DNA from: Macrostomum hystrix
Lineage: Eukaryota > Animalia > Platyhelminthes
DNA length: 64,000 nucleotides
Direction of reading: 5' to 3'
Assembly (NCBI GenBank): GCA_950097015.1
Contig: CATNEN010000038.1
Span: 13,888,001 to 13,952,000 of the forward strand
Below, in pieces: positions 124-57,800 of the stretch. The notes beneath the pieces were generated by a model, which did no database searches, was not told the origin of the DNA, and saw only the letters and a list, made by a program, of their open reading frames with translations. The position numbers and the translations under genes are program-made. Positions within the stretch are counted from its first letter, which is position 1. Each line of letters begins with the position of its first letter.

Positions 124-1826
<1,703 letters not shown>

Positions 1827-2629: not shown

Positions 2630-3290
2630 AAATACTTCTAGACCAGTTGATACAGGGACTTCTAGACCAGTTAGTACAGGGACTTCTAGACCAGTTAGTA
2701 CAGGGACTTCTAGACCAGTTAGTACAAGGACTTCTAGACCGGTTGATACAGGGACTTCTAGAACAGTTAATACAGGGACTTCTAGACCAGTTAGTACAGG
2801 GACTTCTAGACCAGTTAGTACAGGGACTTCTAGACCAGTTAGTACAGGGACTTCTAGACCGGTTGATACAGGGACTTCTAGAACAGTTGATACAGGGACT
2901 TCTAGACCAGTTGATACAGGGACTTCTAGAACAGTTGATACAGGGACTTCTAGACCAGTTGATACAGGGACTTCTAGACCAGTTGATACAGGGACTTCTA
3001 GAACAGTTGATACAGGGACTTCTAGACCAGTTGATACAGGGACTTCTAGACCAGTTGATACAGGGACTTCTAGAACAGTTGATACAGGGACTTCTAGAAC
3101 AGTTGATACAGGGACTTCTAGACTGGTTGATACAGGGACTTCTATACCGGTTAAAATTGGTACTCCTATACCGGTTAAAATTGGTACTCCTATACCGGTT
3201 AAAATTGGTACTCCTATACCGGTTAAAATTGGTACTCCTATACCGGTTAAAATTGGTACTCCTATACCGGTTAAAATTGGTACTCCTGTA
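2630..3290. repeat. 24-bp minisatellite with two unit types
   Basis: cagggacttctagaccagttgata, switching near 3140 to ctcctataccggttaaaattggta; source of ORFs 2560..3390 and 2612..3337. Confidence 0.95.
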
Positions 3291-3424: not shown

Positions 3425-6400
3425 TCATCGGTATTCATTAAAAGTGCTATTCACATAAACGCTGTCATATCTGGCTGCGTTCTGCGTACTCTGCAGCTGC
3501 TCAGTTGAGTTTCGCATTACTGCGTAACTCACTGTGCTCAGCCTGACCACTGCCTCTGCCGGCGTCGCCGACAGCGCTGTCGCGGCGTTCAGTTGTATCG
3601 GTCGGCGAGGCGCGGGTGCGGGCACTTCTGCTAGAGGCCTCGGCGGCTCTGGCAGGGCTCTCTGCGGCTGAAGGACGCCCAGCTCAATGGGCTGCAGCTG
3701 CTCAAACTGAGCTGGCGGTGGGTCATTGTGGCCGCTACGCTTCCTGCGATGGGCAGATGCAGGGAGGAGACTGTGAGGAGAAGCAGGGAGCAATGAGGAG
3801 TTGTGGGGATTAAAAAGAGTCAAATGTCATTTTCGTCAACAAAATCACTGCTCACCTGAGGTTGTGAAATCGAGATTTCATGCAAGTCCAGATGTCGGTA
3901 GAAAAATACCCCACATATCCGCCAGCTGGCAGCAGCAGCAGCAGCAGCGGCAGCATGGATTGCGAGTCTGGCTTGGAATTAGACTGAGCAGCGTTGATGC
4001 AGACAGCCGGAGAGGCTTCAGTGCCGGCACAGCTGCGTTGAGCGCAAGCGGTGCGCGCAGAGGACTTCTCGCTGGACTGGATCGACTCGCGAGTTCTGAG
4101 CATCCGCAGGCCGGCGGCGATGGAGAATGAGCCGATCTGCAGGTTTCAATGAGTTCTGTGCGATATATTTCTGGGCGTGTTTTATTCTTGGATTCGTGTG
4201 GTCGATGGTTGCGCGATGGGGTATGTAGAATTAGAGAATTTGGGATTAGAAAATGTGGGATTAGGGAACGTATGATTGGGGAATATGGGATTAGTGAATG
4301 AAGGATTAGAGAATGTGGGATAAGGGAATATAGGATTAGGGAATGCAGGACTATGGAATTTGGGATTAGAGAATGTGGGATTAGGGAATTTGGGATTAGG
4401 AAATTTGGGATTAGGAAATTTGGGATTAGGGAATGTGGGGGGATTAGGGAATGTGGGGGGATTAGGGAATGTGGGGGATTAGGGAATTTGGGTTTAGGGA
4501 ATGTAAGATTAGGGAATGAGGGATCAGCTAATGTGGGATTAGGGAATGTGGGAAAAGGGAATGTGAAATTATGTAATATTGGATTAAGGAATGTGGGATT
4601 AGGAAGTGTGGGATTAAAGAATGTAGGATAGTAGGATTAAGATAGGGACGATATTGAATTGCGGTTTATTAGATTAGGGGATTCAAGATATAAAGATGTC
4701 ATATTTGGGATATTAGATCTTGGGAAGTCAAATTAGTGGATGTCAGAATAGGAGATATCTGAGTATGAGACTTGCTGCTCACCCGCTCATATTTCCACTC
4801 CCCGCCGCTGTTCCTCAGCTGCCACAGGCTGAGCAAGTTCGCTCCCGTCCTGTCGTCGCCGATTCGCCCATAGTCGCCGAATCGCCTTGGCTTCGCCGTA
4901 GATCCGCCAGTCGGATTGTCGAAAAGCAGCCGATTGCCTCTGGCCAGGACGGCCTGCCGGCTGGAGTTCTGCAGCCTGGCATCGCAGGTTGCTATGCCTG
5001 TTAGACATGGTTGCTATACCTGTTAGACATGGTTGCTATACCTGTTAGACATGGTTGCTATACCTGTTAGACATGGTTGCTATACCTGTTAGACATGGAT
5101 GGTACCTGTTAGACATGGATGGTGCCTGTTAGACATTGTTGCTATACCAGTTAGACATGGTTGCTAGCTGTTAGACATGGTTGCTAGGCTTAGTTTTTTA
5201 TATTGTTAGACATTTCGGTCACTAAACCACTGAGTGGGGTTGAAGCTGCAAAATGAAAGTCACCTCAGCCAGATCATGAACGGAGGCAGTCGCAGTAAAC
5301 ACTGCATTTTTCAGATCATCTCGATAGACAGTTGACGTGAACAATACAATACAATACAATAAGTACAATGTCCACCGACCACAAGTGGCCTGAAAAGGGG
5401 GGCATTGTCAAAAAACACGTCTGTGTTCTGTGCGTCTGACGCACGTCTGACGTGAACGTAGTGGCCTCTTCAACCAGTGATGGCACGGTGGAAAACACGG
5501 GCTGGTTTACGCTGCCGAGGCTGCTCCCAAATGCACCGTTTGTGTCTCGGTACTGCAGCAGAAACTCCAGCTGACTCTCTCGGTCGATGTTGGTGTACAC
5601 AGGCAGTAAGCGGAGTTGACGGGTTCGCTATATACAATTACCAACTCCAGGTGTGGATCACTACGGTGTAGCAAGCTCACAGCTTGGTGGTTGAAGCTTC
5701 GAGTGAAAGATTCAAGTGAGTTCTAACCATCGCTGACTACACCGTCGATGACTTCACCATGATAAACCTACCGTCGATGACTACCGTCGATGACTACACC
5801 GTCGATGACTACACCGTCGATGATCACACCGTCGATGACTACACCGTCGATGACTACACCGTCTATGACTACGACCGTCTATGACTACACCGTCTATGAC
5901 TACACCGTCTATGACTACACCGTCTATGACTACACCGTCTATGACTACGACCGTCTATGACTACACCGTCTATGACTACCGTCGATGACTATACCGTCGA
6001 TGACTACACCGTCGATGATCACACCGTCGATGACTACACCGTCGATGACTACACCGTCTATGACTACGACCGTCTATGACTACACCGTCTATGACTACAC
6101 CGTCTATGACTACACCGTCTATGACTACACCGTCTATGACTACGACCGTCTATGACTACACCGTCTATGACTACACCGTCTACGATTACACCGTCTGTGA
6201 CTACACCGTCTGTGACTACACCGTCTACGATTACACCGTCTATGACTACACCGTCTGTGACTACACTGACGATGAATACACCGTCTATGACTACACCGTC
6301 TATGACTATACGATTACACCGTCTGTGACTACACCGTCTATGATCAAACCGTCGATGACTACACCGTCTATGACTACACTGACGATGAATACACCTTTGA

Positions 6401-6977
6401 TGACTACACAGTGAAAACCCTTCTATTGATAAAAATACTGTCGAGAACTGTGTTCGGTCGACATCTACTTGCACAGTATAAGTACACTTGATAAGTAAAG
6501 TTAATTAGATGTTAAGCCAACACTATTTTACTCTCATTACGCGCATGCGTCGATATAAAGCATTAGTTCTTACCTGAATTTTCAGACCACCTCTGACGAA
6601 TGATAGCAGCAATTTGATAATTTGATTGGCAGACTTCCAGCTGACAGGTAGCTGGACCGAAAATATGTTTTAGTACTGTATTGCTGAGAGCTGCATTAAC
6701 ACGACTTGATGCATCCCAGCTTCTGATGCTGCTGCATTTCCCTTCCGTTCATGTCGGAAGCTGTTTTGAGTTTAATATTATCACCGCGTGCCCTCCACAG
6801 CTCGCAGCTAGCAATGATCGAATGAATTAGTTTTCAGTTGAGACTTTCTTAACAAAATATGTATGTACAGCTAGCTGCCTGTATGACCGTATCAAGAGAA
6901 TACTTACCGGGCAGAACTTGTCCCGATACACAATTAAGAATTGCAAATGCGGTTGCTATCAAAATTGGAAGCCTCAT
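3425..6977 (-). CDS. Putative single-pass receptor (~435 aa) with partial Venus-flytrap/ANF-receptor-like ectodomain. Exons 6977-6908, 6807-6785, 6651-6574, 5722-5681, 5627-5445, 5389-5264, 4968-4783, 4136-3856, 3743-3425
   Basis: All joins are GT-AG and phase compatible (1308 nt, open). Signal peptide MRLPILIATAFAILNCVSG; flytrap-like motifs LKNAVFTATASVHDL and RFGDYGRIGD...LSLWQLRNSGGEWKYERIGSF; hydrophobic SMLPLLLLLLPAGGYVGYF followed by basic MKSRFHNLRKR; Pro/Tyr-rich tail. The three 5' exons are least certain. Confidence 0.55.
4225..4645. repeat. Degenerate G-rich ~20-bp minisatellite (intronic)
   Basis: gggattagggaatgtg-type units. Confidence 0.85.
4988..5186. repeat. 23-bp minisatellite (intronic)
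   Basis: ggttgctatacctgttagacat-type units. Confidence 0.9.
5343..5447 (-). mobile_element. 105-bp retroposon-like insertion with 10-bp target-site duplication
   Basis: Direct repeat TGACGTGAAC at 5333-5342 and 5448-5457; (ATTGT)n tail at the minus-strand 3' end; GTGCGTC-A-GACGCAC hairpin at the 5' end. Confidence 0.75.
5735..6412. repeat. 15-bp minisatellite (intronic)
   Basis: atgactacaccgtct / atgactacaccgtcg units. Confidence 0.95.
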
Positions 6978-18644: not shown

Positions 18645-21600
18645 AACAAGTCCGCTAACCCGGCTTCCGCTGCCGATGCCGCTGACTCTGCCGCAGCCGG
18701 CGGCCTCGCTAGTGCCGCTGGCGGCGGTGGCGTCAGTCACAGGCGGGCCGTCAGCTGCGCTGGTCGCGGCGGTGTCGGATCAGCAGGTGTGTTCTAACTC
18801 GCTAACCTGTTCTAACCATTCATATCAGTTCTAACTGATATCAGTTCTAATCCCAATCACTGTGCTCTTATTGGGGGACTCAATGCCAAGTTTTGAACAA
18901 ACTGGGCTCAAAAATCGGATTAGCAAAAGTTCTAACCGAAAGTGTGTGCTAATCCAGCAATTATTATAATCTTTTTGTGTTTTATTAGTTTTTATGACTT
19001 ATTTAACCGCGCTTTGATATGATTTAGATTCCTAACTTTATTCATTAATGTTGTTTGAATTCAGTTTGAAGGCTATTATTTATTAGACTTGTATAAATTA
19101 ATGAGTATTTGCTTAACAATGGATTTATCTGTCTATCTTAGCCTGTGAAATGGCTTGTAGACTCGTCTATAGTTACCTAGTCTATTTTGGATGATAACTA
19201 GAATCTCAAAGCAGGGATAAAATTAGTGTTTTTTTAGACGCCTCATTTCCAGTCCATTCATTGAACAACTGTCTGTACATTTGAAGGTCATTTTTTAAAT
19301 TGACTCACTAAAACCCAACTGTATAATTATGGAAACCAAGCAGAATCTCATTTAGGTGGAATCACAAATGGCTATAAAATCAATTTGTATTTCCAGTTTG
19401 TCCTAGGCTGTTTCGCCTCTATCCGCAGCTGTATCTGCTGCCTTATCATGGTCGAGGCCCTTCGCCGCCTCCATATTTGCGCGGTAAACTTGAAAATAAA
19501 GGAAATTAATATGAAATAATATTTGTTTTATTAAAACAGGACATATTGCTTCAGGGTTCGACTGTTGATTATAAGATTTAAGATTCGAGGCTTAAAATGC
19601 GTGCCCTTTGTAATATTGTATTTAAGGAATTTTTTTAAAAATAGTTTTAAGTATTCGATATAGTAAACTACTTACTTGACTAAGTAGCATGGAATGCGTT
19701 TTTCTTGGAGAGCTCGTATTGTTGTGCAATTTATTGCGCTGCCTCTGCATGGCTCAGTTAACCTTGACCTTTAAATTGAAGAATTCCTTCACCCTTGAAT
19801 GCCCGCCAAATATAGCCGGCTCAATGCCAGACATGTCCGCTATTGGCAAAACTAATCTAGCCTCCAACGATAGCAGCAGCGATGCGACCACTTCGTCAAC
19901 TGACGCCGCTGCGGCTGGCGTTACAAAGCGGCGCTTGGCTCCCTCCCAGCCAGCTCTGAATGCCATCAGTGAGACTGAGGTGGCTGTGCTCAACGAATCA
20001 GAATCTAAGCCAAGTAGTAGAAGAACAATATCTGCTAAAGTGGCTGCAACAAAGCAGCAGCAGCAGAGAAAGTCTTTGTTTGGCAGTCAGCTACCGCCTA
20101 GGCGTGGCGTGTCAATGACTGATGTGTCCTCTGTGAGGTCGCAGAAACCGACTGTACAGGGTAAGGCAGGAGAGGCGAAGGCCATTGGACGAACACACTC
20201 TGATCAATTGAGACATTTAATTCCAAATTTTAGTTTGACATTTTCAAACCAGTTTTTAACCAAAATTTTAAACTAGTTAGTTTCTTAATTGTCCTTAATC
20301 TCATGATCTCATATTCACATAATTCATGCAATTAATTAACTTGCTAGTTGTACTTTTATCAGGTGATATAAAGCAGTTAGCTATTCGTTATTTTAACAAA
20401 ATGTGATTTTGCTTGTATTCATGATTGTTTAGTAATTTTTAGATTGCTCTGGATTAACTAGTATCTACCGGGGGGCCCATGCGTTTAAGGACAACTTAAA
20501 AATAATCAAATGTATATACGAGGGGTGTCCAAAAAGTAGTGATACTTTTGCTCGTACAGCCTTACTGCATGCTTGAAAATCAGCAAGTTTGGTGTTGTTG
20601 GAAAGCGAAAAATATCAGCTTTAATTTGACTGCAAACATTTAACAAAAAGACAACCTATAACAAAGTTATGAATAGAAACACACAACATGGTCAGCCATA
20701 GAGTTACAATGAATTTATGCATGGTGTAACAGGTCAAGAAGTTTCGACAGTTAGTACGACTCATCATCATCAGGGAGGGAAGCTTTCTCGACATAATTAC
20801 CCCCCGATTGCACGCACTTCTCCCAGCGACGAAACAAGTGATCAATCGCATCTGCGTAGATCTGTCGCGGAATCACGTGCAAAAGTACTCTGCGGACTTC
20901 CTGTTCCAGGTGATCACGGCTGACATGGACACGGCCCCTCAGGTGGCGCTTCAATTGAGGGAAAAGGGCAAAATCCGCAGGCGCGAGATCTGGCGAATAT
21001 GGCGGATGAGGCAGAAGGTCAAACTTTAGCTTTTTGATGGCCTCCATTGTTTGGTGGGCAGTGTGCGGCCGGGCGTTGTCATGATGCAGGATGACTGGCT
21101 TGACTCCCGAGCGCCGCTTATTTTGGATGTCTGCCTTCAGGCTTGCAAGGAGAGACGAATAACGGTCTGCGTTGATCATCGTATTCGGCTCCAGGAAGTC
21201 AATGGTGATTGGGCCATTACAGTCAAAGAAAACTGACAGCATGATTTTCTTACAGTGAGTTTCACGGCGAGCCTTGAGTGGTGGGTCGGAACCCTTAAGT
21301 GTCCACACTTTAGACTCTTGCTTTGTCGGCGGGTCAAAATGTGGAACCCACGTCTCGTCGCCAGTAACAATCAACTGGCGGAACTGATTCCAGCCACCGC
21401 GTTGACTTACCAGATTCAGGTTCCCTTGGCATGTCTGCTGGCGCTGCAGTCGCATATCAGCAGTGAGGAGCTTTGGGACCCAGCGGGCGCTCAGCTTAAC
21501 GAAGTTCATATTGGTCAGGCAGAGATGAACCGTTGATCGTGGCGTGTCGAGTCTGTCAGCAATCTCACGAATTGTCATTCTGCAGTCTTCTTCCAGCAGA

Positions 21601-24600
21601 TCAAGAATCCGGTCAGCCAAAGCCTTTGAGCTTGGTGCAGATGGCCTTCCTGGCCTTGGCAAGTCAGCCAAATTTGTTCTTCCTGACTCAAATTGCTCGA
21701 CCCATCTGTACACCGTCATGCGACTTACTGCTTCAGCTCCGTGAATGCTGCACAGATGATGGTAAATCTCCTGTCCACTTTTCCCAATACTCCATAGTGT
21801 GTGAATTGCGTGTCGCTGTCCTTCCTTTGAGCGCACGTCCATAACTGTCAGTTGAACAGAATCTGGTCTTTAAAAAGCAAGCACTTGTGAAAGAAAAATG
21901 AGCTGGCAGTGCAGAAGCAGGCAGGCAGGCAGAAGCAAGCAGGCAGTGCGAAGAAGACTTAGCCACAATTTACCACAGACAAAAAAGCAACCCTCGTACG
22001 CTCGTAAAATGCTACCCCAGTATTTATTGGTTTACATTTATTGATTTGTTAAGCTCTAAAGCTTCATGAATCTTTGAGGCAGATAAAACTCAACAAAGTC
22101 AACCATACAGTATTTTTGTAAGTCTATGAGCAACCCTTGCTCAAATAGACAGTGATAACTTTTTTTAAAAACAACATATGAGGATGATTTTTTAGTCAAA
22201 TTAAGGCTGATATTTTTCGCTTTCCAACAACACCAAACTTGCTGATTTTCAAGCATGCAGTAAGGCTATACGAGCAAAAGTATCACTACTTTTTGGACAC
22301 CCCTCGTACATTTTTAATATAAAAACATCCAACAAACAAAAACTTTAACATTTTAACTGACCGCCATATTGTCTAGATGGCAACTAAAAATAACATTTAC
22401 TCAATGTAGCCCCCCTCCACTGCATACACGGCTTCAATGCGAGACCGAAACTTGGTACAGGCACCTCTGATGACGGCAGGGCCCTGAGCTGACCAGGCAG
22501 CACTAACAGCAACTTGGAGAGTCTCCACGGTAGCATAAGTTGTTAAACATGCAACGCGGGCCACGTTGTTCCACACAAAGTAATCGAGAGGGGAACAGTC
22601 TGGACTCGATGGTGGCCAAGTGGTCGCATCCCAGAAGTCCTCGCCGAGCTCCTGGCGAAGAAATTCTTGAGTAGCGACAGCCGTGTCGGCAGGAGCGCCG
22701 TCCTGCTGAAAAACAAACGTACCTGGGGCAAAGTTGTGTCGAATCCATGGCAGTACATGACCCTGCAGCATGCGGATGTACTCGGCTGAGTTGATTTTCA
22801 CTCCAGCTGGTACCCAGATCGGGGGAGCCACCCTGCCGTCCGAAGCCACGACACCGAGAAACATGGCACCTTTGGCATGTTGCTGGCGAGGCATATAGCG
22901 GTGTTCCTCCGCAGCAGAGCTGGAGTCTCCTGACGGTGCCAGATATCGGTCATTCTGTCGATTGAAGGCCCTGTCGACGGTACAGAACTTCTCATCGCTG
23001 AAGATCAGAACCTTCCCGGCGTCCGGTCCTTTCAGTCGGTTGATTAATTGACGGCACCGTTCTGCTCGAACAGATCTGGCAGTTGCTGTTAATGCCTGCG
23101 ATTCCTTAATCTTATACGAACTGAGGTCAAGGTCTTCGTGTACCAGCCTCTGCATCGTGCTCCTTGAAACACCACTTGACCTGGCAAGCTCCCTGATGGA
23201 CACTCGAGGGTCAGCTTTGATCCTCTCAGCCACAGTTTCGCGAAGCTCCTCTGACCTGATTGGTCTTGGAGAGTTGTGGGGTTTCCTTTCAACTGCCGCA
23301 GCAGCTCCAACTTCTTCAATGTCGCTCTTGACGGCGTAAACAAACGACCTTGCAACATTGAGGTTCTCTGCTATCTGTGCTGGGCTTATACCCCGCGCGA
23401 GCTGGTCTACCACCATCAAACGTTTAGCGCGATTCATGGCTAATGCTAAGTTGCCGAAAATTTTCGCGGCAGCTACAGACTATATAGATACTATTTTGTC
23501 TATGACCAAAACTATTATGCTCTAGCTACCGCTGGCTTTGCTTTCTTCTATTTTTAAGGTTGTCCTTAAACGCATGGGCCACCCGGTACGCTAAAACACT
23601 GCCTGGTATTTATAACAAATTTTGTCACATTTTTAACAGCCTGTCGTGTTGTGATTGCGGTTTATAATGCAATAAAAATTGTTGCTTTTTCAAAGTCAGT
23701 CACTATAAAAGTACATACGAGCCTTTCCCCACCCGCCTTGAAATTTAGTGTCTTCGGCAGGCAGCGAGGCGGCTTCGTCGCCAGCTAGAAAGTCTCGACA
23801 GGCTGTGAAGTCCAGTTTGGGCACAGAAAATGAGGGTAAGTCAAGTGTTTATTGTGTGCGAAATTTGTTTATGCAACCCTTTTAGGCTTATTACGCTTTC
23901 TGCTTTACTTTCAGTAGAGCAGTGTGCTTTTTTCGCATATAAAAGCAAGATTTTTTTGTACTTAACAATCCAGATGAGCAAGCGGACTCCGCAAACGGAG
24001 TCACCTATCTTTATCAGGCTAATTCTGCCGGTAAACAAAATGATGAAAAATGATTTTATATTTACTGTTCTTTTTTATACTGTCCTAAGTCTGTAGTTTG
24101 TTAATATTGGTAAATTATCTTCTGTTTTGTATCGAAGACTTGCCACTTTGAAGTTTCATCGATTTTTAAAACGTCGAATTTTTTTCTCTATTGTATAGAA
24201 ATGTATCATTCCTAGTTTTTTATTTGATAATTGGTCTTTTATTTTAATAGCCACTTTCCAACACACAAGAAATTGCTTCATATCTATATTTATTTAAAAC
24301 CATTTAATCTAGATAATCTGATTTAAGCAGTTAAACCATCCCAGATGCTCAGATTTGAGCAGTCCCTCCAACCCAGATGCCCAGATTTGAGCAGTCCCTC
24401 CAACCCAGATGCTCAGATTTGAGCAGTCCCTCCAACCCAGATGCCCAGATTTGAGCAGTCCCTCCAACCCAGATGCTCAGATTTGAGCAGTCCCTATAAC
24501 CCAGATGCTCAGATTTGATCAGTCCCTCCAACCCAGATGCTCAGATTTGAGCAGTTCCTATAACCCAGATGCTCAGATTTGATCAGTCCCTCCAACCCAG

Positions 24601-37092: not shown

Positions 37093-40000
37093 ATGTTGAG
37101 CTCTGGTGTTCGCAGCCTTCTCGCCGCCTCATCTGCGGTCAATCGGTGCTGGAGCCTCCAGGGCGTCCGCACCACTTACTCCGCCGCGCTGACTCTGCGA
37201 GTGCGCGATAAAATCGAAGAGACTCGCCGACGCTCCCTGGAGGGCGGTGGAGCCAAGCGCATCGAAGCCCAGCACCAGAAGGGCAAACTGACAGCCCGTG
37301 AGCGCATCGAGCTGCTCATGGATCCCGGCAGCTTCCGCGAGTACGACGCCTTTGTTGAGCACGACTGCGTCGATTTCGGCATGGAAAAGTCCAAGACGCC
37401 AGCCGACAGCGTCATCACTGGCCACGGCCTCATTCACGGCCGGCCGGCGTTTGTGTTCAGCCAGGATTTCACCGTCTACGGCGGCAGCTTGTCGCTGGCG
37501 CACGCCAAGAAAATCTGCAAGGCGAGTCGATTAGTTTTCTGTTTTAGTGCTCGGCAGCTATATAATGTCACTGGTGACCATGCCAAGGTCAAATGAAGTC
37601 TTGTAAGACAAGGTCGAGTACTTCGTCCTGTGAAGTCCATGTCTTCATCTTGTGAAGTAAAGTCCATGACGTCGTCCTGTCAAGTCCGTGACGTCATTTT
37701 GTGAAGTCCATGACGTCATCTTCTGAAATCAAGTCCATGACGTCATCTTCTGAAATCAAGTCCATGACGTCATCTTCTGAAATCAAGTCCATGACGTCAT
37801 CTTCTGAAATCAAGTCCATGACGTCATCTTGTGAAATCTATGACGTGCTCTTGTGAAATAAAGTTCATGACGTCATCTTGTGAGATCAAGTCCATGATGT
37901 CATATTGTAAAATCGATGACATCGTTATGTCAACACCATGTCATCATCTTGTGACGTAGTCTTGGGTTGTCTCTCGCTTTATCTACAGTGGCACATCTGA
38001 ATGATATAGTCTTTGGTGTCTGTATGTACTCATTGAAGACTTGTCTTGGCATTTATTATGTCGGTGTAATTTCATCATTATTATATCTGCATCGTACCAT
38101 CTTTGATGACCGTGTAGTGTCATTTACGCTATTCAATGTCAATTTCCTACCGCCGCAGGTGATGGACCAGGCTATGGTTGTCGGCGCTCCGGTCATCGGT
38201 CTGAACGACAGTGGCGGCGCCCGCATCCAGGAGGGCGTGGCCAGCCTGGCCGGCTATGCCGACATCTTCGAGCGCAACGTCCTGGCCTCGGGCGTCGTGC
38301 CCCAGATCTCCATGATCATGGGACCCTGCGCCGGCGGCGCTGTGTACTCACCGGCCCTGACCGACTTCATCTTCATGGTTGAGCAGTCGTCCTACCTGTT
38401 TATTACTGGCCCTGATGTGGTCAAGACTGTGACAGGTGAGGATTCTGGCAACTTTGAGGATTCGGCTTCAAGCCATCATTTCCAGCCAGATTAAGGCTAT
38501 ATTTCCAGCTACTTACCTTTATTTCCTGCATAATTGAGCCATAATTTCCAACTAGATTGGGCCTTTATTTCAAGCTAGATTGAGCCATCATTTCCAGCTA
38601 GATTGAGCCTTCGTTACCAGTCAGATTCAAGCTATATTTCAAACTAGATTAAGCCTTTGTTTACAGTTAGATTAAGCCATAATTTCCAGCTAGATTGAGC
38701 CTTCGTTTACAGCTAGATTAAGCCATCATTTCCAGCTAGATTGAGCCTTTGTTTAAAGCTAGATTAAGCCATCATTTCCAGCTAGATTGAGCTTTTGTTT
38801 AAAGCTAGATTAAGCCATCATTTCCAGCCAGATTAAGCCATCATTTCCAGCCAGATTAAGCCATCATTTCCAGCTAGATTAAGCCATCATTTCCAGCCAG
38901 ATTAAGCCATCATTTCCAGCTAGATTAAGCCTTCTTTTACAGCTACGGCTCGTAGATTAATTTATAGCTATATTTAACCAACTAGCTAGCTAGACGGCTA
39001 TTCCCCATTAACACCGCAGGCGAGACCGTGACCCAGGAGGAGCTGGGCGGCTCCAAGACCCACACCGTGACATCTGGCGTGGCCCATCGCGCCTTCGAGA
39101 ACGATGTTGACGCGCTGGCCACTCTGCGCGAGTTGTACACCTTCCTGCCAATGTCCAACCGCGATCGGGCTCCTATTCGCGACTGCCAGGTGCGTTGCTG
39201 ACCTAGTTAATGAGTTGAATACCCCACTCCATGAATGACACATTTTTAGTCTATGACGCATTCTTTGACTCCATGACTCATTCTTAGATTCCGTGACTCA
39301 TTCTTAGATTCCGTGACTCATTCTTAGATTCTATGACTCATTTTTGGATTATGTCTCATTCTAGATTCTATGACTCATTATTAGATTCCGTGACTCATTC
39401 TTAGATTCCATGGCTAATTCTAATATTCTATGACTCATTTTTAGATTCCATACCTCATTCTAGATTCTATGACTCATTCTTAGATTCCATGACTCATTCT
39501 AGATTCTATGACTCATTCTTAGATTCCATGAACCGGTACAGTAACAGTACTAACTAATTAAACGCCTGAGCGATCGACCTACTTTAGACTCGATGACCTA
39601 AAATTGAACTATGAGTCGAAAAATGTTACTCGCTGACAGCAACAACTTCAGTGCCTGAATGCATGACTGTTGTGCATAGGATTGAATGTTTTAGATTTAA
39701 TTTGTCAAGCACTTTAACCAACATATTAATCAACTTACAGGGCTTGGTAAGCAAAACTGTTCAAATATGGTCATTGTCAGTTTGATTGCTGATCTTGCGA
39801 ATTTTTTAAGTCATGTGTTGATTTTTCGCCTATATCGAGCTGTATATCAAATTAATTTCCTGGTGTGTCCTTTTGCTCAAACTTTTCCTTATCGCTGAAT
39901 GAACCGTTTACCAGTGTTCTTACTTTACAAATTAATTGACCATTGAACAGAATTTATTTTACTAAATATTATTAGTTGTTTATAGTTTATGACTAAAGTA

Positions 40001-48800: not shown

Positions 48801-51800
48801 ATCTGATCCACCTACTGATAAAGTAGATAATCCAATCTGATCCACCAACTGATAAAGTAGATAATCCAATCTGATCCACCTACTGATAAAGTAGATAATC
48901 CCATCTGATCCACCAACTGATAAAGTAGATAATCCCTTCTGATCCACCAACTGATAAAGTAGATAATCCCATCTGATCCACCAACTGATAAAGTAGATAA
49001 TCCCATCTGATCCACCAACTGATAAAGTAGATAATCCCATCTGATCCACCTACTGATAAAGTAGATAATCCCATCTGATCCACCTACTGATAAAGTAGAT
49101 AATCCCATCTGATCCAACAACTGATAAAGTAGATAATCCCATCTGATCCACCAACTGATAAAGTAGATAATCCCATCTGATCCACCAACTGATAAAGTAG
49201 ATAATCCCTTCTGATCCACCAACTGATAAAGTAGATAATCCCATCTGATCCAACAACTGATAAAGTAGATAATCCCATCTGATCCACCAACTGATAAAGT
49301 AGATAATCCCATCTGATCCACCAACTGATAAAGTAGATAATCCCATCTGATCCACCACCTGATAAAGTAGATAATCCCATCTGATCCACCAACTGATAAA
49401 GTAGATAATCCCATCTGATCCACCAACTGATAAAGTAGATAATCCCATCTGATCCACCTACTGATAAAGTAGATAATCCCATCTGATCCACCAACTGATA
49501 AAGTAGATAATCCCATCTGATCCACCAACTGATAAAGTAGATAATCCCATCTGATCCACCAACTGATAAAGTAGATAATCCCATCTGATCCACCAACTGA
49601 TAAAGTAGATAATCCCTTCTGATCCAACAACTGATAAAGTAGATAATCCCATCTGATCCACCTACTGATAAAGTAGATAATCCCTTCTGATCCACCAACT
49701 GATAAAGTAGATAATCCCATCTGATCCACCAACTGATAAAGTAGATAATCCCATCTGATCCACCACCTGATAAAGTAGATAATCCCATCTGATACACCTA
49801 CTGATAAAGTAGATAATCCCATCTGATACACCAACTGATAAAGTAGATAATCCCATCTGATCCAACTACTGATAAAGTAGATAATCCCATCTGATCCACC
49901 AACTGATAAAGTAGATAATCCCATCTGATCCACCACCTGATAAAGTAGATAATCCCATCTGATACACCTACTGATAAAGTAGATAATCCCATCTGATACA
50001 CCAACTGATAAAGTAGATAATCCCATCTGATCCAACTACTGATAAAGTAGATAATCCCATCTGATCCAACTACTGATAAAGTAGATAATCCCATCTGATC
50101 CACCAACTGATAAAGTAGATAATCCCATCTGATCCACCTACTGATAAAGTATATAATCCCATCTGATCCAGCAACTGATAAAGTAGATAATCCCATCTGA
50201 TCCACCAACTGATAAAGTAGATAATCCCATCTGATCCACCACCTGATAAAGTAGATAATCCCATCTGATCCACCACCTGATAAAGTAGATAATCCCATCT
50301 GATACACCTACTGATAAAGTAGATAATCCCATCTGATCCACCACCTGATAAAGTAGATAATCCCTTCTGATCCACCACCTGATAAAGTAGATAATCCCTT
50401 CTGATCCACCAACTGATAAAGTAGATAATCCCATCTGATACACCTACTGATAAAGTAGATAATCCCATCTGATCCACCACCTGATAAAGTAGATAATCCC
50501 ATCTGATACACCTACTGATAAAGTAGATAATCCCTTCTGATCCACCTACTGATAAAGTAGATAATCCCATCTGATCCACCAACTGATAAAGTAGATAATC
50601 CCATCTGATCCACCAACTGATAAAGTAGATAATCCCTTCTGATCCACCACCTGATAAAGTAGATAATCCCTTCTGATCCACCACCTGATAAAGTAGATAA
50701 TCCCATCTGATCCACCACCTGATAAAGTAGATAATCCCATCTGATCCACCACCTGATAAAGTAGATAATCCCATCTGATCCACCAACTGATAAAGTAGAT
50801 AATCCCATCTGATCCACCTACTGATAAAGTAGATAATCCCATCTGATCCACCAACTGATAAAGTAGATAATCCCTTCTGATCCACCACCTGATAAAGTAG
50901 ATAATCCCATCTGATCCACCACCTGATAAAGTAGATAATCCCATCTGATCCACCACCTGATAAAGTAGATAATCCCATCTGATCCACCACCTGATAAAGT
51001 AGATAATCCCATCTGATCCACCAACTGATAAAGTAGATAATCCCATCTGATCCACCACCTGATAAAGTAGATAATCCCTTCTGATCCACCAACTGATAAA
51101 GTAGATAATCCCTTCTGATCCACCACCTGATAAAGTAGATAATCCCTTCTGATCCACCACCTGATAAAGTAGATAATCCCATCTGATCCACCACCTGATA
51201 AAGTAGATAATCCCATCTGATCCACCACCTGATAAAGTAGATAATCCCATCTGATCCACCAACTGATAAAGTAGATAATCCCATCTGATCCACCACCTGA
51301 TAAAGTAGATAATCCCTTCTGATCCACCACCTGATAAAGTAGATAATCCCTTCTGATCCACCAACTGATAAAGTAGATAATCCCATCTGATCCACCAACT
51401 GATAAAGTAGATAATCCCATCTGATCCACCACCTGATAAAGTAGATAATCCCTTCTGATCCACCAACTGATAAAGTAGATAATCCCATCTGATCCACCAC
51501 CTGATAAAGTAGATAATCCCTTCTGATCCACCACCTGATAAAGTAGATAATCCCTTCTGATCCACCACCTGATAAAGTAGATAATCCCATCTGATCCACC
51601 AACTGATAAAGTAGATAATCCCATCTGATCCACCTACTGATAAAGTAGATAATCCCATCTGATCCACCTACTGATAAAGTAGATAATCCCATCTGATCCA
51701 CCTACTGATAAAGTAGATAATCCCATCTGATCCACCTACTGATAAAGTAGATAATCCCATCTGATCCACCTACTGATAAAGTAGATAATCCCATCTGATC

Positions 51801-54800
51801 CACCAACTAATAAAGTAGATAATCCCATCTGATCCACCTACTGATAAAGTAGATAATCCCATCTGATCCAGCAACTGATAAAGTAGATAATCCCATCTGA
51901 TCCACCAACTGATAAAGTAGATAATCCCATCTGATCCACCAACTGATAAAGTAGATAATCCCATCTGATCCACCAACTGATAAAGTAGATAATCCCATCT
52001 GATCCACCACCTGATAAAGTAGATAATCCCATCTGATCCACCACCTGATAAAGTAGATAATCCCATCTGATCCACCTACTGATAAAGTAGATAATCCCAT
52101 CTGATCCACCAACTGATAAAGTAGATAATCCCATCTGATCCACCTACTGATAAAGTAGATAATCCCATCTGATCCACCAACTGATAAAGTAGATAATCCC
52201 ATCTGATCCACCTACTGATAAAGTAGATAATCCCATCTGATCCACCAACTGATAAAGTAGATAATCCCATCTGATCCACCAACTGATAAAGTAGATAATC
52301 CCATCTGATCCACCTACTGATAAAGTAGATAATCCCATCTGATCCAGCAACTGATAAAGTAGATAATCCCATCTGATCCACCAACTGATAAAGTAGATAA
52401 TCCCATCTGATCCACCAACTAATAAAGTAGATAATCCCATCTGATCCACCAACTAATAAAGTAGATAATCCCTTCTGATCCACCTACTGATAAAGTAGAT
52501 AATCCCATCTGATCCAACAACTGATAAAGTAGATAATCCCATCTGATCCACCAACTGATAAAGTAGATAATCCCATCTGATCCACCAACTGATAAAGTAG
52601 ATAATCCCATCTGATCCACCAACTGATAAAGTAGATAATCCCATCTGATCCACCAACTGATAAAGTAGATAATCCCATCTGATCCACCTACTGATAAAGT
52701 AGATAATCCCATCTGATCCACCAACTGATAAAGTAGATAATCCCATCTGATCCACCAACTGATAAAGTAGATAATCCCATCTGATCCACCAACTAATAAA
52801 GTAGATAATCCCTTCTGATCCACCTACTGATAAAGTAGATAATCCCATCTGATCCAACAACTGATAAAGTAGATAATCCCATCTGATCCACCAACTGATA
52901 AAGTAGATAATCCCATCTGATCCACCACCTGATAAAGTAGATAATCCCATCTGATCCACCACCTGATAAAGTAGATAATCCCATCTGATCCACCTACTGA
53001 TAAAGTAGATAATCCCATCTGATCCACCAACTGATAAAGTAGATAATCCCATCTGATCCACCTACTGATAAAGTAGATAATCCCATCTGATCCACCAACT
53101 GATAAAGTAGATAATCCCATCTGATCCACCTACTGATAAAGTAGATAATCCCATCTGATCCACCAACTGATAAAGTAGATAATCCCATCTGATCCACCAA
53201 CTGATAAAGTAGATAATCCCATCTGATCCACCAACTGATAAAGTAGATAATCCCATCTGATCCACCACCTGATAAAGTAGATAATCCCATCTGATCCACC
53301 ACCTGATAAAGTAGATAATCCCATCTGATCCACCACCTGATAAAGTAGATAATCCCATCTGATCCACCAACTGATAAAGTAGATAATCCCATCTGATCCA
53401 CCACCTGATAAAGTAGATAATCCCTTCTGATCCACCAACTGATAAAGTAGATAATCCCTTCTGATCCACCACCTGATAAAGTAGATAATCCCTTCTGATC
53501 CACCACCTGATAAAGTAGATAATCCCATCTGATCCACCACCTGATAAAGTAGATAATCCCATCTGATCCACCACCTGATAAAGTAGATAATCCCATCTGA
53601 TCCACCAACTGATAAAGTAGATAATCCCATCTGATCCACCACCTGATAAAGTAGATAATCCCTTCTGATCCACCACCTGATAAAGTAGATAATCCCTTCT
53701 GATCCACCAACTGATAAAGTAGATAATCCCATCTGATCCACCAACTGATAAAGTAGATAATCCCATCTGATCCACCACCTGATAAAGTAGATAATCCCTT
53801 CTGATCCACCAACTGATAAAGTAGATAATCCCATCTGATCCACCACCTGATAAAGTAGATAATCCCTTCTGATCCACCACCTGATAAAGTAGATAATCCC
53901 TTCTGATCCACCACCTGATAAAGTAGATAATCCCATCTGATCCACCAACTGATAAAGTAGATAATCCCATCTGATCCACCTACTGATAAAGTAGATAATC
54001 CCATCTGATCCACCTACTGATAAAGTAGATAATCCCATCTGATCCACCTACTGATAAAGTAGATAATCCCATCTGATCCACCTACTGATAAAGTAGATAA
54101 TCCCATCTGATCCACCTACTGATAAAGTAGATAATCCCATCTGATCCACCAACTAATAAAGTAGATAATCCCATCTGATCCACCTACTGATAAAGTAGAT
54201 AATCCCATCTGATCCAGCAACTGATAAAGTAGATAATCCCATCTGATCCACCAACTGATAAAGTAGATAATCCCATCTGATCCACCAACTGATAAAGTAG
54301 ATAATCCCATCTGATCCACCAACTGATAAAGTAGATAATCCCATCTGATCCACCACCTGATAAAGTAGATAATCCCATCTGATCCACCACCTGATAAAGT
54401 AGATAATCCCATCTGATCCACCTACTGATAAAGTAGATAATCCCATCTGATCCACCAACTGATAAAGTAGATAATCCCATCTGATCCACCTACTGATAAA
54501 GTAGATAATCCCATCTGATCCACCAACTGATAAAGTAGATAATCCCATCTGATCCACCTACTGATAAAGTAGATAATCCCATCTGATCCACCAACTGATA
54601 AAGTAGATAATCCCATCTGATCCACCAACTGATAAAGTAGATAATCCCATCTGATCCACCTACTGATAAAGTAGATAATCCCATCTGATCCAGCAACTGA
54701 TAAAGTAGATAATCCCATCTGATCCACCAACTGATAAAGTAGATAATCCCATCTGATCCACCAACTGATAAAGTAGATAATCCCATCTGATCCACCAACT

Positions 54801-57800
54801 GATAAAGTAGATAATCCCATCTGATCCACCAACTAATAAAGTAGATAATCCCTTCTGATCCACCTACTGATAAAGTAGATAATCCCATCTGATCCAACAA
54901 CTGATAAAGTAGATAATCCCATCTGATCCACCAACTGATAAAGTAGATAATCCCATCTGATCCACCACCTGATAAAGTAGATAATCCCATCTGATCCACC
55001 ACCTGATAAAGTAGATAATCCCATCTGATCCACCTACTGATAAAGTAGATAATCCCATCTGATCCACCAACTGATAAAGTAGATAATCCCATCTGATCCA
55101 CCTACTGATAAAGTAGATAATCCCATCTGATCCACCAACTGATAAAGTAGATAATCCCATCTGATCCACCTACTGATAAAGTAGATAATCCCATCTGATC
55201 CACCAACTGATAAAGTAGATAATCCCATCTGATCCACCAACTGATAAAGTAGATAATCCCATCTGATCCACCAACTGATAAAGTAGATAATCCCTTCTGA
55301 TCCACCAACTGATAAAGTAGATAATCCCATCTGATCCACCAACTGATAAAGTAGATAATCCCATCTGATCTCACCAGGCATTCTGCAGTTCAGCAAGCGT
55401 GACCAGCACAAACCGGTGCTGATCGGCCTGGACTGCCTTTCAGTCCTGAAGCCGCTGCTGCAGAAACGCCATGCCGCCAGGGATGACGAAGTTCGAGCCT
55501 TCCTGGAGATCGCCCTGTCGCTGGCGCTTTATCCGACTTGCTCCGACGAGGTCAAGAAGGCCCTGGAAGCAGATCTGGCTGCTCTGTCTGCGTACAGCGA
55601 GAAATGGAAAAACTCTTGCCAAATGCGCTCGCTGATCTTGCTAATTAGAGGCAAATTTGGTATATTAATTTGGCTACATAATCCTACTAATAGTAGGATA
55701 AAATGTGTCAATCGACTAAAAACCGATGCGTACAACAGCATTTTCATTTCAGAGCCTAATTCCGCTCCGGCGAGATCCAACGAAGCAGTTTGGACTACTG
55801 ACGCTTTCGCAGATGACAACGAGGGTACTTCAACAAACTTTTAACGTTTGTTAAATACTAAATTATCCATTTTATATGGTTGCTGGAAGCGTCTTTATTG
55901 AATTAACGTGCTAGTACTTTCCTGTATTAAGTTTAATTACTTGTACTTTAGGAATAATCGGAAGTTACTTGAATTAACGAAAGTTACTTGTATGAACGGA
56001 AGTAACTTGTATCAACGGAAGTTACTTGTCTTAATGGACGTTACTTGTATTAATGGAAGTTACTTGAATTAACGGAAGTTGCTTGTATCAATGGAAGTTA
56101 CTTGTATTAACGGAAGTTACTCGTATTAACGGAAGTTGCTTGAATTAACGAAAGTTACTTGTATTAAAGGAAGTTACTTGTAATAACGAAAGTTACTTGT
56201 ATCAATGGAAGTTACTTAAATTAACGGAAGTTACTTGTATTAACGAAAGTTACTTGTATGAACGGAAGTACAAGCTACGAGTTACTTGTATGATACTCGT
56301 AGCTTGTATCAACGGAAGTTACTTGTCTTAATGGACGTTACTTGTATTAATGGAAGTTACTTGTATTAACAAAAGTAACTTTTATTAACGAAAAAACTTG
56401 TATTAATTAACGGAAGTTACTTGTATCATTTTAGAGACATTGGCACCCAACACTACAATAGAAGTAGAGGACGATGGTACTGCTGATGTCAACAGAGGTA
56501 CGAGTATTATAACTGATTGCAGTCGGTTGATTGTGCATTTATTGATATCTTAGCTATGCAAATATGATACAGCTAAAATTTCGAAGAATTTTTTATCGCA
56601 AATTGATAGAGTTTGTCGCGCAAGTTGCCAATACAGAAACAGATTTGCGTGACGCTAATCCAAAGCAGCAGCAGAAAATTTCTGGTAAGAGCCATTGCTA
56701 GTGGCCCAGTCTGTGTACAAGGTGGGGCCTAGTCTGTGTACCAGGTGTGTGGCCTAGTCTGTGTACAAGGTGTGGCTTAATCTGGGAACAAGGTATTGCC
56801 TAGTCTGTGTACACGTTTTGACCTAGTCTGTGTACAAGGTATGGCCTAGTCTGTGTACAAGGATAGCCTAAGTCTGTATACAAGGTGTGTGGCCTAGTCT
56901 GTGTACAAGGTGTGGCTTAGTCTGGGTACAAGGTATTGCCTAGTCGGTGTACAAGTTATGACCTAGTCCTCGCACCAATTTCACAAAGCCAACCTGCGCT
57001 AAACTTCAGCCAGTCAGCTGATTGTCGGCTACTCAAGGAATGCCCCAGCAGACGCCACATTTGCCAAATGGCTTGTGGACCAGCTGAACAAGATTGGACA
57101 GGCGGTTAGTCGGACACCAGCTCAATATTTTTACGATTTGAGTGAGAAATTGACTCAAATTTACTTGAAAACTATATTTTGACCAGAGCTGGACAGTCGA
57201 TATAACTCCCAAGCTTTTGGAAGAGCCACCTCAGCAGCCAGAGCGTCTCTGTACCATAGATGCTATCAATGATTGCCGGGCCCTGATCTCCTGCGTATCG
57301 AGGGCCTACGAGGAGGACTGCGTCTGCAGGCACGGTAAGACAGCGTTGAACGGCTGAATGCGGGTCAGGGTGTGGCGCATTTAGGAGCAAGTAATTACAC
57401 GCTAACAGATTTCATTGGGCTATGACTACAATCAAGGACAATCAGCTACTCCCAAACCACCCAACAACCACCCAGCAACCACCCAGCAACCACCCAGCAA
57501 CCACCCAGCAACCCCCAGCAGCCACCCAGCAACCACCTAACAACCCCCAGCAACCATCCAGCAACCACGGCAGCAGGCAAGCCGTCGATCCCTACCATCC
57601 CTACAGAAGTGCAGCTCGCCTCGGAACTGCGCAAGCCCTGGATTGCTCTACGCTGCAATTCCGCACAGGACAGCTACAGCCCAGGCGGCTGGCTCCTGGC
57701 CTGTCTGGGCGATCGGGCCACCTGGGAAGCTTTGCTGGATTTCTCAAACAGAAATCTTTGGGCAGATTCATTGGACAAGCTGAGCAAACTGCTCAAAGAG

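What the first reader, a model, noticed from the sequence alone, without database searches (positions are those of the whole stretch)
5333..5457. Candidate recent intron gain: a TSD-flanked retroposon-like insert in a coding exon supplies its own splice sites and restores the frame
Seen: a 10-bp direct repeat (TGACGTGAAC, 5333-5342 and 5448-5457) flanks 105 bp ending in an (ATTGT)n tail. Removing the 115 bp gives the continuous minus-strand frame ...VEEATTFTS-TVYRDDLKNAVFTATASVHDLAE. Left in, 115 bp would frameshift the gene. However, the insert contains GAC|GTGCGT (donor 5444; the same hexamer is the PCCB intron 3 donor), a TTTGAC branch-like site and CCCCCCTTTTCAG| (acceptor 5390). Splicing this 55-nt segment leaves 60 nt (20 aa, DATCGRWTLYLLYCIVLFTS) with the frame intact. 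The neighbouring predicted intron (5680-5628) is 53 nt, so the size is plausible. Inference: a short retroposon acting as an intron generator. Most described introners are DNA-transposon derived.
Basis: partly seen in the sequence, partly recalled or inferred. Interest (0 to 1): 0.85.

Follow-up and report, generated by a model that had tools for sequence, protein, structure and literature searches.

The report
LINE fragment inside a dead gene's exon
A very young, cut-short copy of a jumping gene (a LINE) did land inside a real protein-coding exon of this flatworm, but that gene also has a premature stop codon upstream, so this is most likely an ordinary insertion in a dead gene and not a new intron.

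Summary
A 10-bp direct repeat (5333-5342 and 5448-5457) flanks a 105-bp insert ending in (ATTGT)n. Removing one repeat plus the insert restores a reading frame.

The insert is the last ~83 nt of an abundant APE+RT LINE: the final ORF codons, the stop, the whole 3' UTR and the tail. A 24-nt filler of unknown origin sits at its 5' junction. It is 100% identical to the youngest copies, so it is recent.

The host sequence is a genuine coding exon. Macrostomum lignano proteins match both flanks with no insert, so they act as a cross-species empty site.

Those homologs also reveal the rest of the gene, and it looks dead:
- Exon 2 carries an in-frame TGA (6751-6749) inside a conserved block.
- The exon 3 acceptor expected from homology reads TG, not AG.
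- The genome has no intact paralog.

No RNA run was listed for the locus, so splicing could not be tested.

Best reading: a young 5'-truncated LINE insertion in a unitary pseudogene. The intron-gain idea is unsupported and unlikely.

Earlier notes of this scan report SINE-made introns elsewhere in this genome; this case differs. Retrotransposon-derived introners are already published.

The parts
5448..5457 (-). Target-site duplication, copy upstream in gene orientation (GTTCACGTCA on the minus strand; codes ..FTS)
   Evidence: Exact 10/10 repeat; sequence read
5424..5447 (-). 24-nt filler at the 5' junction, not part of the LINE.
   Evidence: Not shared with any other copy; no source in LINE copies or nearby, and all its 12-mers are unique in the window; local repeat D10
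5343..5423 (-). 5'-truncated LINE 3' end: the last ~5 ORF codons, the stop TGA, the complete ~50-nt 3' UTR (with the TTTTCAG|G acceptor-like motif, AG at 5391-5390) and the (ATTGT)4 tail (about 5362-5343)
   Evidence: 83-100% identity to at least 38 other copies; ORF end and 3' UTR defined in long copies; APE + RVT_1
5333..5342 (-). Target-site duplication, downstream copy. Its first two bases (GT) could equally be the end of the tail.
5390..5444 (-).
   Evidence: Enumeration; no RNA run listed
5264..5599 (-). Host exon 3, interrupted by the insert. It is conserved with M. lignano proteins on both sides. The bases before 5599 are TG, not AG. Its 3' end at 5264 (GAG|GTGA) is inferred.
   Evidence: phmmer hit P0001 at E 1.5e-7; BLASTP/tblastn alignments; acceptor analysis
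5600..6573 (-). Host intron 2 (974 nt).
   Evidence: Boundaries fixed by the homology junction ..S|V..; tandem repeat
6574..6807 (-). Host exon 2, 57-61% identical to M. lignano P0008/P0009
   Evidence: the genome search E 1.9e-20; tblastn E 1e-24
6749..6751 (-). In-frame TGA (premature stop) inside the conserved block of exon 2, where all three M. lignano proteins aligned there (P0008, P0009, P0010) lack a stop; P0008 and P0009 have Leu
6808..6907 (-). Host intron 1, 100 nt, GTAAGT...GCTAG
   Evidence: Phase-consistent join of exons 1 and 2
6908..6977 (-). Host exon 1: ATG plus a hydrophobic signal-peptide-like leader, phase 1, in frame with exon 2
   Evidence: The signal-peptide call is by eye only.

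Best explanation
A LINE of an abundant, recently active family (one ORF with an APE endonuclease and a reverse transcriptase, an (ATTGT)n tail) inserted by target-primed reverse transcription into exon 3 of a Macrostomum-specific gene, in the sense orientation. Reverse transcription stopped after about 83 nt, which left the last ORF codons, the stop, the 3' UTR and the tail. The 5' end was joined untidily with 24 extra nucleotides, and 8-10 bp of target were duplicated. The net +115 nt shifts the host frame. In this genome the host gene is a single-copy (unitary) pseudogene: besides the insert, it has a premature TGA at codon 43 in exon 2, and it probably lacks the ancestral exon 3 acceptor. 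The insert is therefore a neutral or gene-killing insertion, not a functional new intron. Shown: the insertion, its family, its youth, the coding nature of the target and the TGA. Inferred: the mechanism of the 5' junction, the loss of the acceptor, the order of the lesions and the lack of expression.
For: TSD and tail. At least 39 family copies, with the window copy 100% identical to the youngest ones over 82 nt. Long copies encode Exo_endo_phos + RVT_1 in one ORF of 940-1100 aa that ends at the TGA inside the inserted fragment. Other truncated copies have 11-13-bp TSDs. Target is coding: the M. lignano protein A0A1I8F705 matches the upstream flank (E 1.5e-7 against 1.8 billion proteins). Its paralogs match the downstream flank with no insert (13/26 identities including AVFT..SV.DLAEV). 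Pseudogene: TGA at 6751-6749 sits between conserved residues of exon 2. No canonical acceptor reproduces the conserved exon 2/3 junction. There is no second copy of the gene in the genome. No RNA holder was listed for 5187-5733.
Against: No RNA or population data could be examined, so transcription and splicing are untested. The exons show no frameshifts and only short in-frame gaps against M. lignano, so any decay is recent. The TGA could in principle be an assembly error or a private allele of the sequenced line. Weak in-frame AGs exist at 5578 and 5545. The M. lignano gene models are fragmentary and frameshifted relative to each other.
Confidence: 0.78

Rival explanations
1. One reading: the insert supplies a donor (5444) and an acceptor (5390). 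A 55-nt intron is spliced out, 60 nt (20 aa) stay in frame, and the gene remains functional. This would be a retroposon-made intron plus a small exonised segment.
For: The GT..AG pair exists and keeps the frame. GTGCGT looks like a donor used at 39190 in the PCCB region. The insert is in sense orientation with a pyrimidine-rich TTTTCAG. Earlier notes of this scan report SINE-made introns elsewhere in this genome (not checked here).
Against: The upstream in-frame TGA and the non-canonical exon 3 acceptor mean the product would be truncated regardless. The donor is in one-off filler, not in the element. The acceptor motif is absent from older subfamilies. Eight alternative pairs keep the frame equally well. 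The supporting 'neighbour intron' is not real. No RNA holder was listed.
Confidence: 0.04
2. The gene was functional until very recently and the LINE insertion is the primary knock-out lesion. The TGA and the odd acceptor are later changes, private to the sequenced line, or errors. This would be an insertional null allele that may still be polymorphic.
For: The insert is extremely young (100% identity, perfect TSD). The flanking exons are free of frameshifts and still 55-61% identical to M. lignano.
Against: The order of the three lesions cannot be resolved from one assembly. Two additional independent point lesions in about 500 nt argue that constraint was already relaxed.
Confidence: 0.15
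3. The flanking ORF is not a gene at all but a chance open frame between minisatellites.
For: No Pfam, PDB or Atlas match. The locus is embedded in minisatellite arrays. An 88-codon open frame is not rare by chance.
Against: Three collinear blocks match M. lignano proteins with exact exon phases and a signal-peptide-like first exon.
Confidence: 0.02

Closest known systems
5'-truncated ('dead on arrival') non-LTR retrotransposon insertions made by target-primed reverse transcription, as known for L1, CR1, L2 and RTE-type LINEs (from general knowledge)
   Same: The fragment is the 3' end of an APE+RT element and carries a simple-repeat tail. It is flanked by a target-site duplication of about 10 bp. 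Truncation points vary between copies, and there are extra nucleotides at the 5' junction.
   Different: Nothing essential differs. The clade of this flatworm LINE was not determined here. The tail is (ATTGT)n, not poly(A).
Introners and other transposon-derived spliceosomal introns (PMC9860276; PMC12130899, which reports about 5% of confidently categorised examples as non-LTR retrotransposons)
   Same: A mobile element inserted in a coding exon, with GT..AG motifs that could in principle remove part of it in frame.
   Different: There is no evidence of splicing. Only part of the insert would be removed. The donor is not carried by the element. The host gene has a premature stop. No other copy was shown to form an intron.
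Unitary pseudogene (a single-copy gene disabled in one lineage while relatives keep it)
   Same: Single copy in this genome, homologs in M. lignano, a nonsense codon, a frameshifting TE insertion, a probable splice-site loss, and no RNA holder listed.
   Different: Decay is slight, so it is recent or still polymorphic. The functional state of the M. lignano copies is itself unverified.

Membership tests
LINE (non-LTR retrotransposon) insertion by TPRT | Sequence is homologous to the 3' end of an element encoding an endonuclease and a reverse transcriptase | tested here: met
   shared 3' end, with bodies over 1.4 kb in other copies; Exo_endo_phos + RVT_1; ORF stop and 3' UTR lie inside the fragment
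LINE (non-LTR retrotransposon) insertion by TPRT | The 3' terminal simple-repeat or A-rich tail abuts the target | tested here: met
   (ATTGT)4 next to the downstream TSD copy; the same tail in all copies
LINE (non-LTR retrotransposon) insertion by TPRT | A target-site duplication flanks the insert | tested here: met
   10/10 repeat; 11-13-bp TSDs in other truncated copies L005, L006, L014, L018
LINE (non-LTR retrotransposon) insertion by TPRT | An empty site exists in a homologous sequence | tested here: met
   M. lignano P0009 and P0010 read through the site without the insert. This is at protein level and across species only; no same-species empty allele was available.
Introner / TE-made spliceosomal intron | The insertion lies in a protein-coding exon | tested here: met
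Introner / TE-made spliceosomal intron | The element is removed from the mRNA by splicing, leaving an intact frame | not testable with these tools
   The look-up of sequencing runs listed no run, so read laying could not be used. Only paper GT..AG pairs exist.
Introner / TE-made spliceosomal intron | The host gene is otherwise intact, so that splicing preserves a functional product | tested here: not met
   In-frame TGA at 6751-6749; no canonical acceptor at the conserved exon 2/3 junction
Introner / TE-made spliceosomal intron | The splice signals are supplied by the element and/or its TSD, and so recur in other copies | tested here: not met
   The donor lies in the locus-specific 24-nt filler. 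The acceptor motif is only in the young subfamily's 3' UTR.
Unitary pseudogene | A disabling mutation in sequence homologous to a coding gene of relatives, with no intact copy in the genome | tested here: met
   TGA plus the 115-nt insert; this is the only locus matching the gene
Unitary pseudogene | Loss of expression, or degradation of the transcript | tested here: inconclusive
   No RNA holder was listed. The tool states that this does not show silence.

The most novel reading that the evidence does not exclude
In residual transcripts of this locus, or in M. hystrix lines that lack the TGA, the young LINE 3' UTR motif TTTTCAG|G acts as a splice acceptor and pairs with a donor in the junction filler or in the upstream exon. 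A LINE fragment would then be part intron and part new coding sequence: a retrotransposon-made intron caught at birth in an animal.
Probability: 0.04. Interest if true: 0.55.

Novelty: new member of a known kind. Interest (0 to 1): 0.15.

Why it matters
As it stands, this is a routine example of LINE insertional mutagenesis or decay in a lineage-specific gene, and it matters little beyond annotation. It is useful as a caution for the scan: a TSD-flanked insert in an exon with GT..AG motifs that keep the frame is not enough to call intron gain, because eight such pairs exist here by combinatorics alone. The whole host gene must be checked for other lesions. Retrotransposon-derived introners are already documented (PMC12130899), and earlier notes of this scan report SINE-made introns in this genome, so the concept would not be new even if it were true here.

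Tried and rejected
- **Pfam:** scans of the flanking ORF pieces, the M. lignano homologs, and candidate downstream exons gave nothing.
- **The search for homologous proteins:** the 104-aa read-through ORF found no candidate, although P0001 shares several 5-residue words with it. That blank is therefore a miss by the word index, not evidence of absence.
- **Names given by UniProt to the M. lignano proteins ('Tub domain', 'PBPb domain'):** neither Tub (PF01167) nor Lig_chan (PF00060) matches near the locus. I do not adopt those names.
- **Other protein searches:** the PDB sequence search and the ESM Atlas on P0009 gave nothing usable. The weaker phmmer hits (FG-GAP repeat proteins, a prenyltransferase) look like compositional resemblance and were dropped.
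- **Source of the 24-nt filler:** none was found in LINE copies or in local sequence. A 7-nt match to the reverse complement of the LINE just upstream of the truncation point is within chance.
- **Rescue of the exon 2/3 frame by one mini-exon:** 475 paper solutions exist. All run through the minisatellite and add residues absent from M. lignano, so they were rejected as noise.
- **A 53-nt GT..AG segment in exon 2 that would remove the TGA:** I rejected this by eye, without a tool call. It would shift the frame and delete conserved residues.
- **Joined models:** database searches were made exon by exon, by reference. Joins were only translated locally, in scripts, to check phases.

Full report
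**1. The observation.**
On the minus strand the sequence reads: host ..ACG TTC ACG TCA, then 105 nt, then GTTCACGTCA again, then host sequence. The 10-bp direct repeat at 5333-5342 and 5448-5457 is exact (family D8). The insert ends in four ATTGT units. The last GT of the downstream repeat copy could equally be tail, so the duplication is 8-10 bp.

**2. What the insert is.**
A search of the window's own genome (220 Mb, 42 contigs) found at least 38 further places matching window 5341-5423 at 83-100% identity. The host flanks 5200-5720 are single copy.

Aligning the copies in element orientation shows two things:
- All of them end in the same (ATTGT)n tail.
- Most of them continue upstream into a shared body of more than 1.4 kb. 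The window copy shares only its last ~83 nt.

Long copies encode one ORF of about 940-1100 aa with an Exo_endo_phos (APE) domain followed by RVT_1. That ORF ends ...FIRDCAAKRAF at the TGA within TTTTGACAATG. So the window fragment contains the last few ORF codons, the stop, the complete ~50-nt 3' UTR and the tail.

The family is very large, with 1,629 first-look candidates. The window copy is 100% identical over 82 nt to the youngest copies, so the insertion is recent. Other 5'-truncated copies carry 11-13-bp duplications, which makes a 10-bp TSD typical for the family.

The 24 nt at the element's 5' junction (5447-5424) are not LINE sequence. They have no detectable source. They contain short local duplications of the junction sequence (D10). 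I read them as the filler often seen at 5' junctions of truncated LINE insertions; that is inference.

**3. Is the target a coding exon? Yes.**
Pfam and a first word-based search were blank. An exhaustive phmmer search with the upstream piece (window 5448-5627, minus strand, 60 aa) found a Macrostomum lignano protein, UniRef100_A0A1I8F705 (E 1.5e-7; 57% identity over 53 aa). Three M. lignano paralogs followed.

Two of them (P0009, P0010) continue past the point that corresponds to the insertion site. They align to the window's downstream flank with 13 of 26 identities, including AVFT..SV.DLAEV (pairwise E 1e-5; linked HSPs). A third (P0001) ends ..SIWLR. That is exactly the +1 frame of the window at GATCTGGCTGAGGTGA, so the nucleotides there are conserved too.

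The homologs therefore serve as an empty site across species. The best matches being Macrostomum proteins also fits the identification of this genome as M. hystrix in earlier notes. I did not verify that identification otherwise.

**4. The rest of the host gene.**
The same homologs match a second, stronger block at window 6808-6575 on the minus strand (E 1.9e-20; 61% identity). Together with an upstream ATG this gives a phase-consistent model:

| Part | Coordinates (minus strand) | Notes |
|---|---|---|
| Exon 1 | 6977-6908 | Hydrophobic, signal-peptide-like leader (by eye); phase 1 |
| Intron 1 | 6907-6808 | 100 nt, GTAAGT..GCTAG |
| Exon 2 | 6807-6574 | Conserved with M. lignano |
| Intron 2 | 6573-5600 | 974 nt, starts GTAAGA, holds the 15-mer minisatellite |
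| Exon 3 | from 5599 | Carries the LINE insert |

Two further defects appear.

- **(a) A premature stop.** An in-frame TGA at 6751-6749 lies in the middle of the conserved block of exon 2. On both sides the conserved residues continue in the same frame, and P0008 and P0009 have Leu at that position. Translation would stop at codon 43, and no in-frame ATG follows within exon 2.
- **(b) A missing acceptor.** The exon 2/3 junction conserved in the proteins (..S|V..) requires exon 3 to start at 5599. The two preceding bases are TG, not AG, although a pyrimidine-rich stretch precedes them.
  - In-frame AGs occur only at 5578 and 5545. Both sit behind purine-rich sequence, and using either would delete conserved residues.
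  - One-mini-exon rescues exist only as 475 combinatorial paths through the minisatellite.

There is no second copy of this gene in the genome.

**5. The proposed new intron.**
Removing 5444-5390 does preserve the frame. So do seven other GT/GC..AG pairs, all using the acceptor at 5390. The existence of one such pair is therefore not informative.

The donor lies in the locus-specific filler. The acceptor-like TTTTCAG|G is a variant of the young subfamily's 3' UTR, whereas older subfamilies read CTTTCCTGACC there. The element therefore does not carry a dedicated pair of splice sites.

A frame rescued at the insert would still sit downstream of a premature stop.

The tool warns that this does not show silence.

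**6. Interpretation.**
The best-supported reading is a young, 5'-truncated LINE insertion, made by target-primed reverse transcription, in exon 3 of a lineage-specific gene that is a unitary pseudogene in this genome (confidence about 0.78).

The order of the three lesions is unresolved. The exons show no frameshifts against M. lignano, so decay is recent. The LINE might even be the first hit (rival, about 0.15).

**7. Comparison with what is known.**
Membership as a LINE/TPRT insertion is met on all four defining features tested. Membership as an introner fails on two tested features (intact host gene; signals supplied by the element) and is untestable on the key one (splicing).

Retrotransposon-derived introners are already described. 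About 5% of confidently categorised examples are non-LTR retrotransposons (PMC12130899; see also PMC9860276). Earlier notes of this scan report SINE-made introns elsewhere in this genome (unchecked). This locus is not such a case on present evidence.

**8. Limits.**
- The M. lignano models are fragmentary and mutually frameshifted.
- The host protein family remains unnamed. The UniProt names 'Tub' and 'PBPb' were not reproduced.
- All database searches used single exons by reference. Joins were only translated locally to check phases.

Noticed in passing
window 4783-4968 (-), about 3900-4000 (-), 3425-3823 (-): Possible further exons of the same minus-strand gene. First, a 62-codon open frame bounded by ..CTGCAG| and |GTGAGC (4968-4783). 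Second, a Leu-rich transmembrane-like stretch ending at ..CTCAG|GTGAGC near 3850. Third, a 132-aa ORF ending in a stop at 3425. None has a Pfam match, and I did not test whether they belong to the host gene.
   Followed up: partly
window 982-1687, 2634-3287, 4219-4629, 4987-5186, 5734-6409: The first 7 kb of the window is packed with minisatellites of 15-, 22-, 24- and 32-nt units. Two of them sit in or next to the introns of the host gene.
   Followed up: no
window 48812-55411 (-): A very long tandem array whose units give open frames with a repeating motif of about 34 aa (..DQMGLSTLSVGGSDGIIYFISWWIRWDYLLYQ..). It lies inside the span that another note calls a SARM1-like gene, and is probably an intronic minisatellite.
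   Followed up: no
window 20751-21842 (-) and 22397-23437 (-): Two intact-looking ORFs side by side. The first (363 aa) matches Transposase_1, DDE_3 and the Mos1 HTH, so it is mariner/Tc1-like. The second (346 aa) matches only HTH domains.
   Followed up: partly
L008 / L010 (G000:C38:32317420-32318400): Two copies of the same LINE 3' end lie about 900 bp apart. Each is followed by a GGTTGTTACTGAAGT-type minisatellite, which suggests a local duplication or an array seeded at the LINE tail.
   Followed up: no
L025 / L032 (G000:C19) and L002 (G000:C31): These two small contigs carry the same LINE copy with identical flanks, so they are probably duplicated or alternative-haplotype contigs. The C19 copy (seen in L003, and in L025) has a 1-nt deletion before the ORF stop, so its ORF runs through the 3' UTR and tail.
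   Followed up: partly
M. lignano proteins P0001, P0008, P0009, P0010: The four M. lignano models of the host-gene family differ by frameshifts and a missing segment. P0001 switches frame before ..SIWLR, and P0010 lacks ..KSSVFTNLDSEYQLE... Either the predictions are flawed or some paralogs are decaying there too.
   Followed up: no
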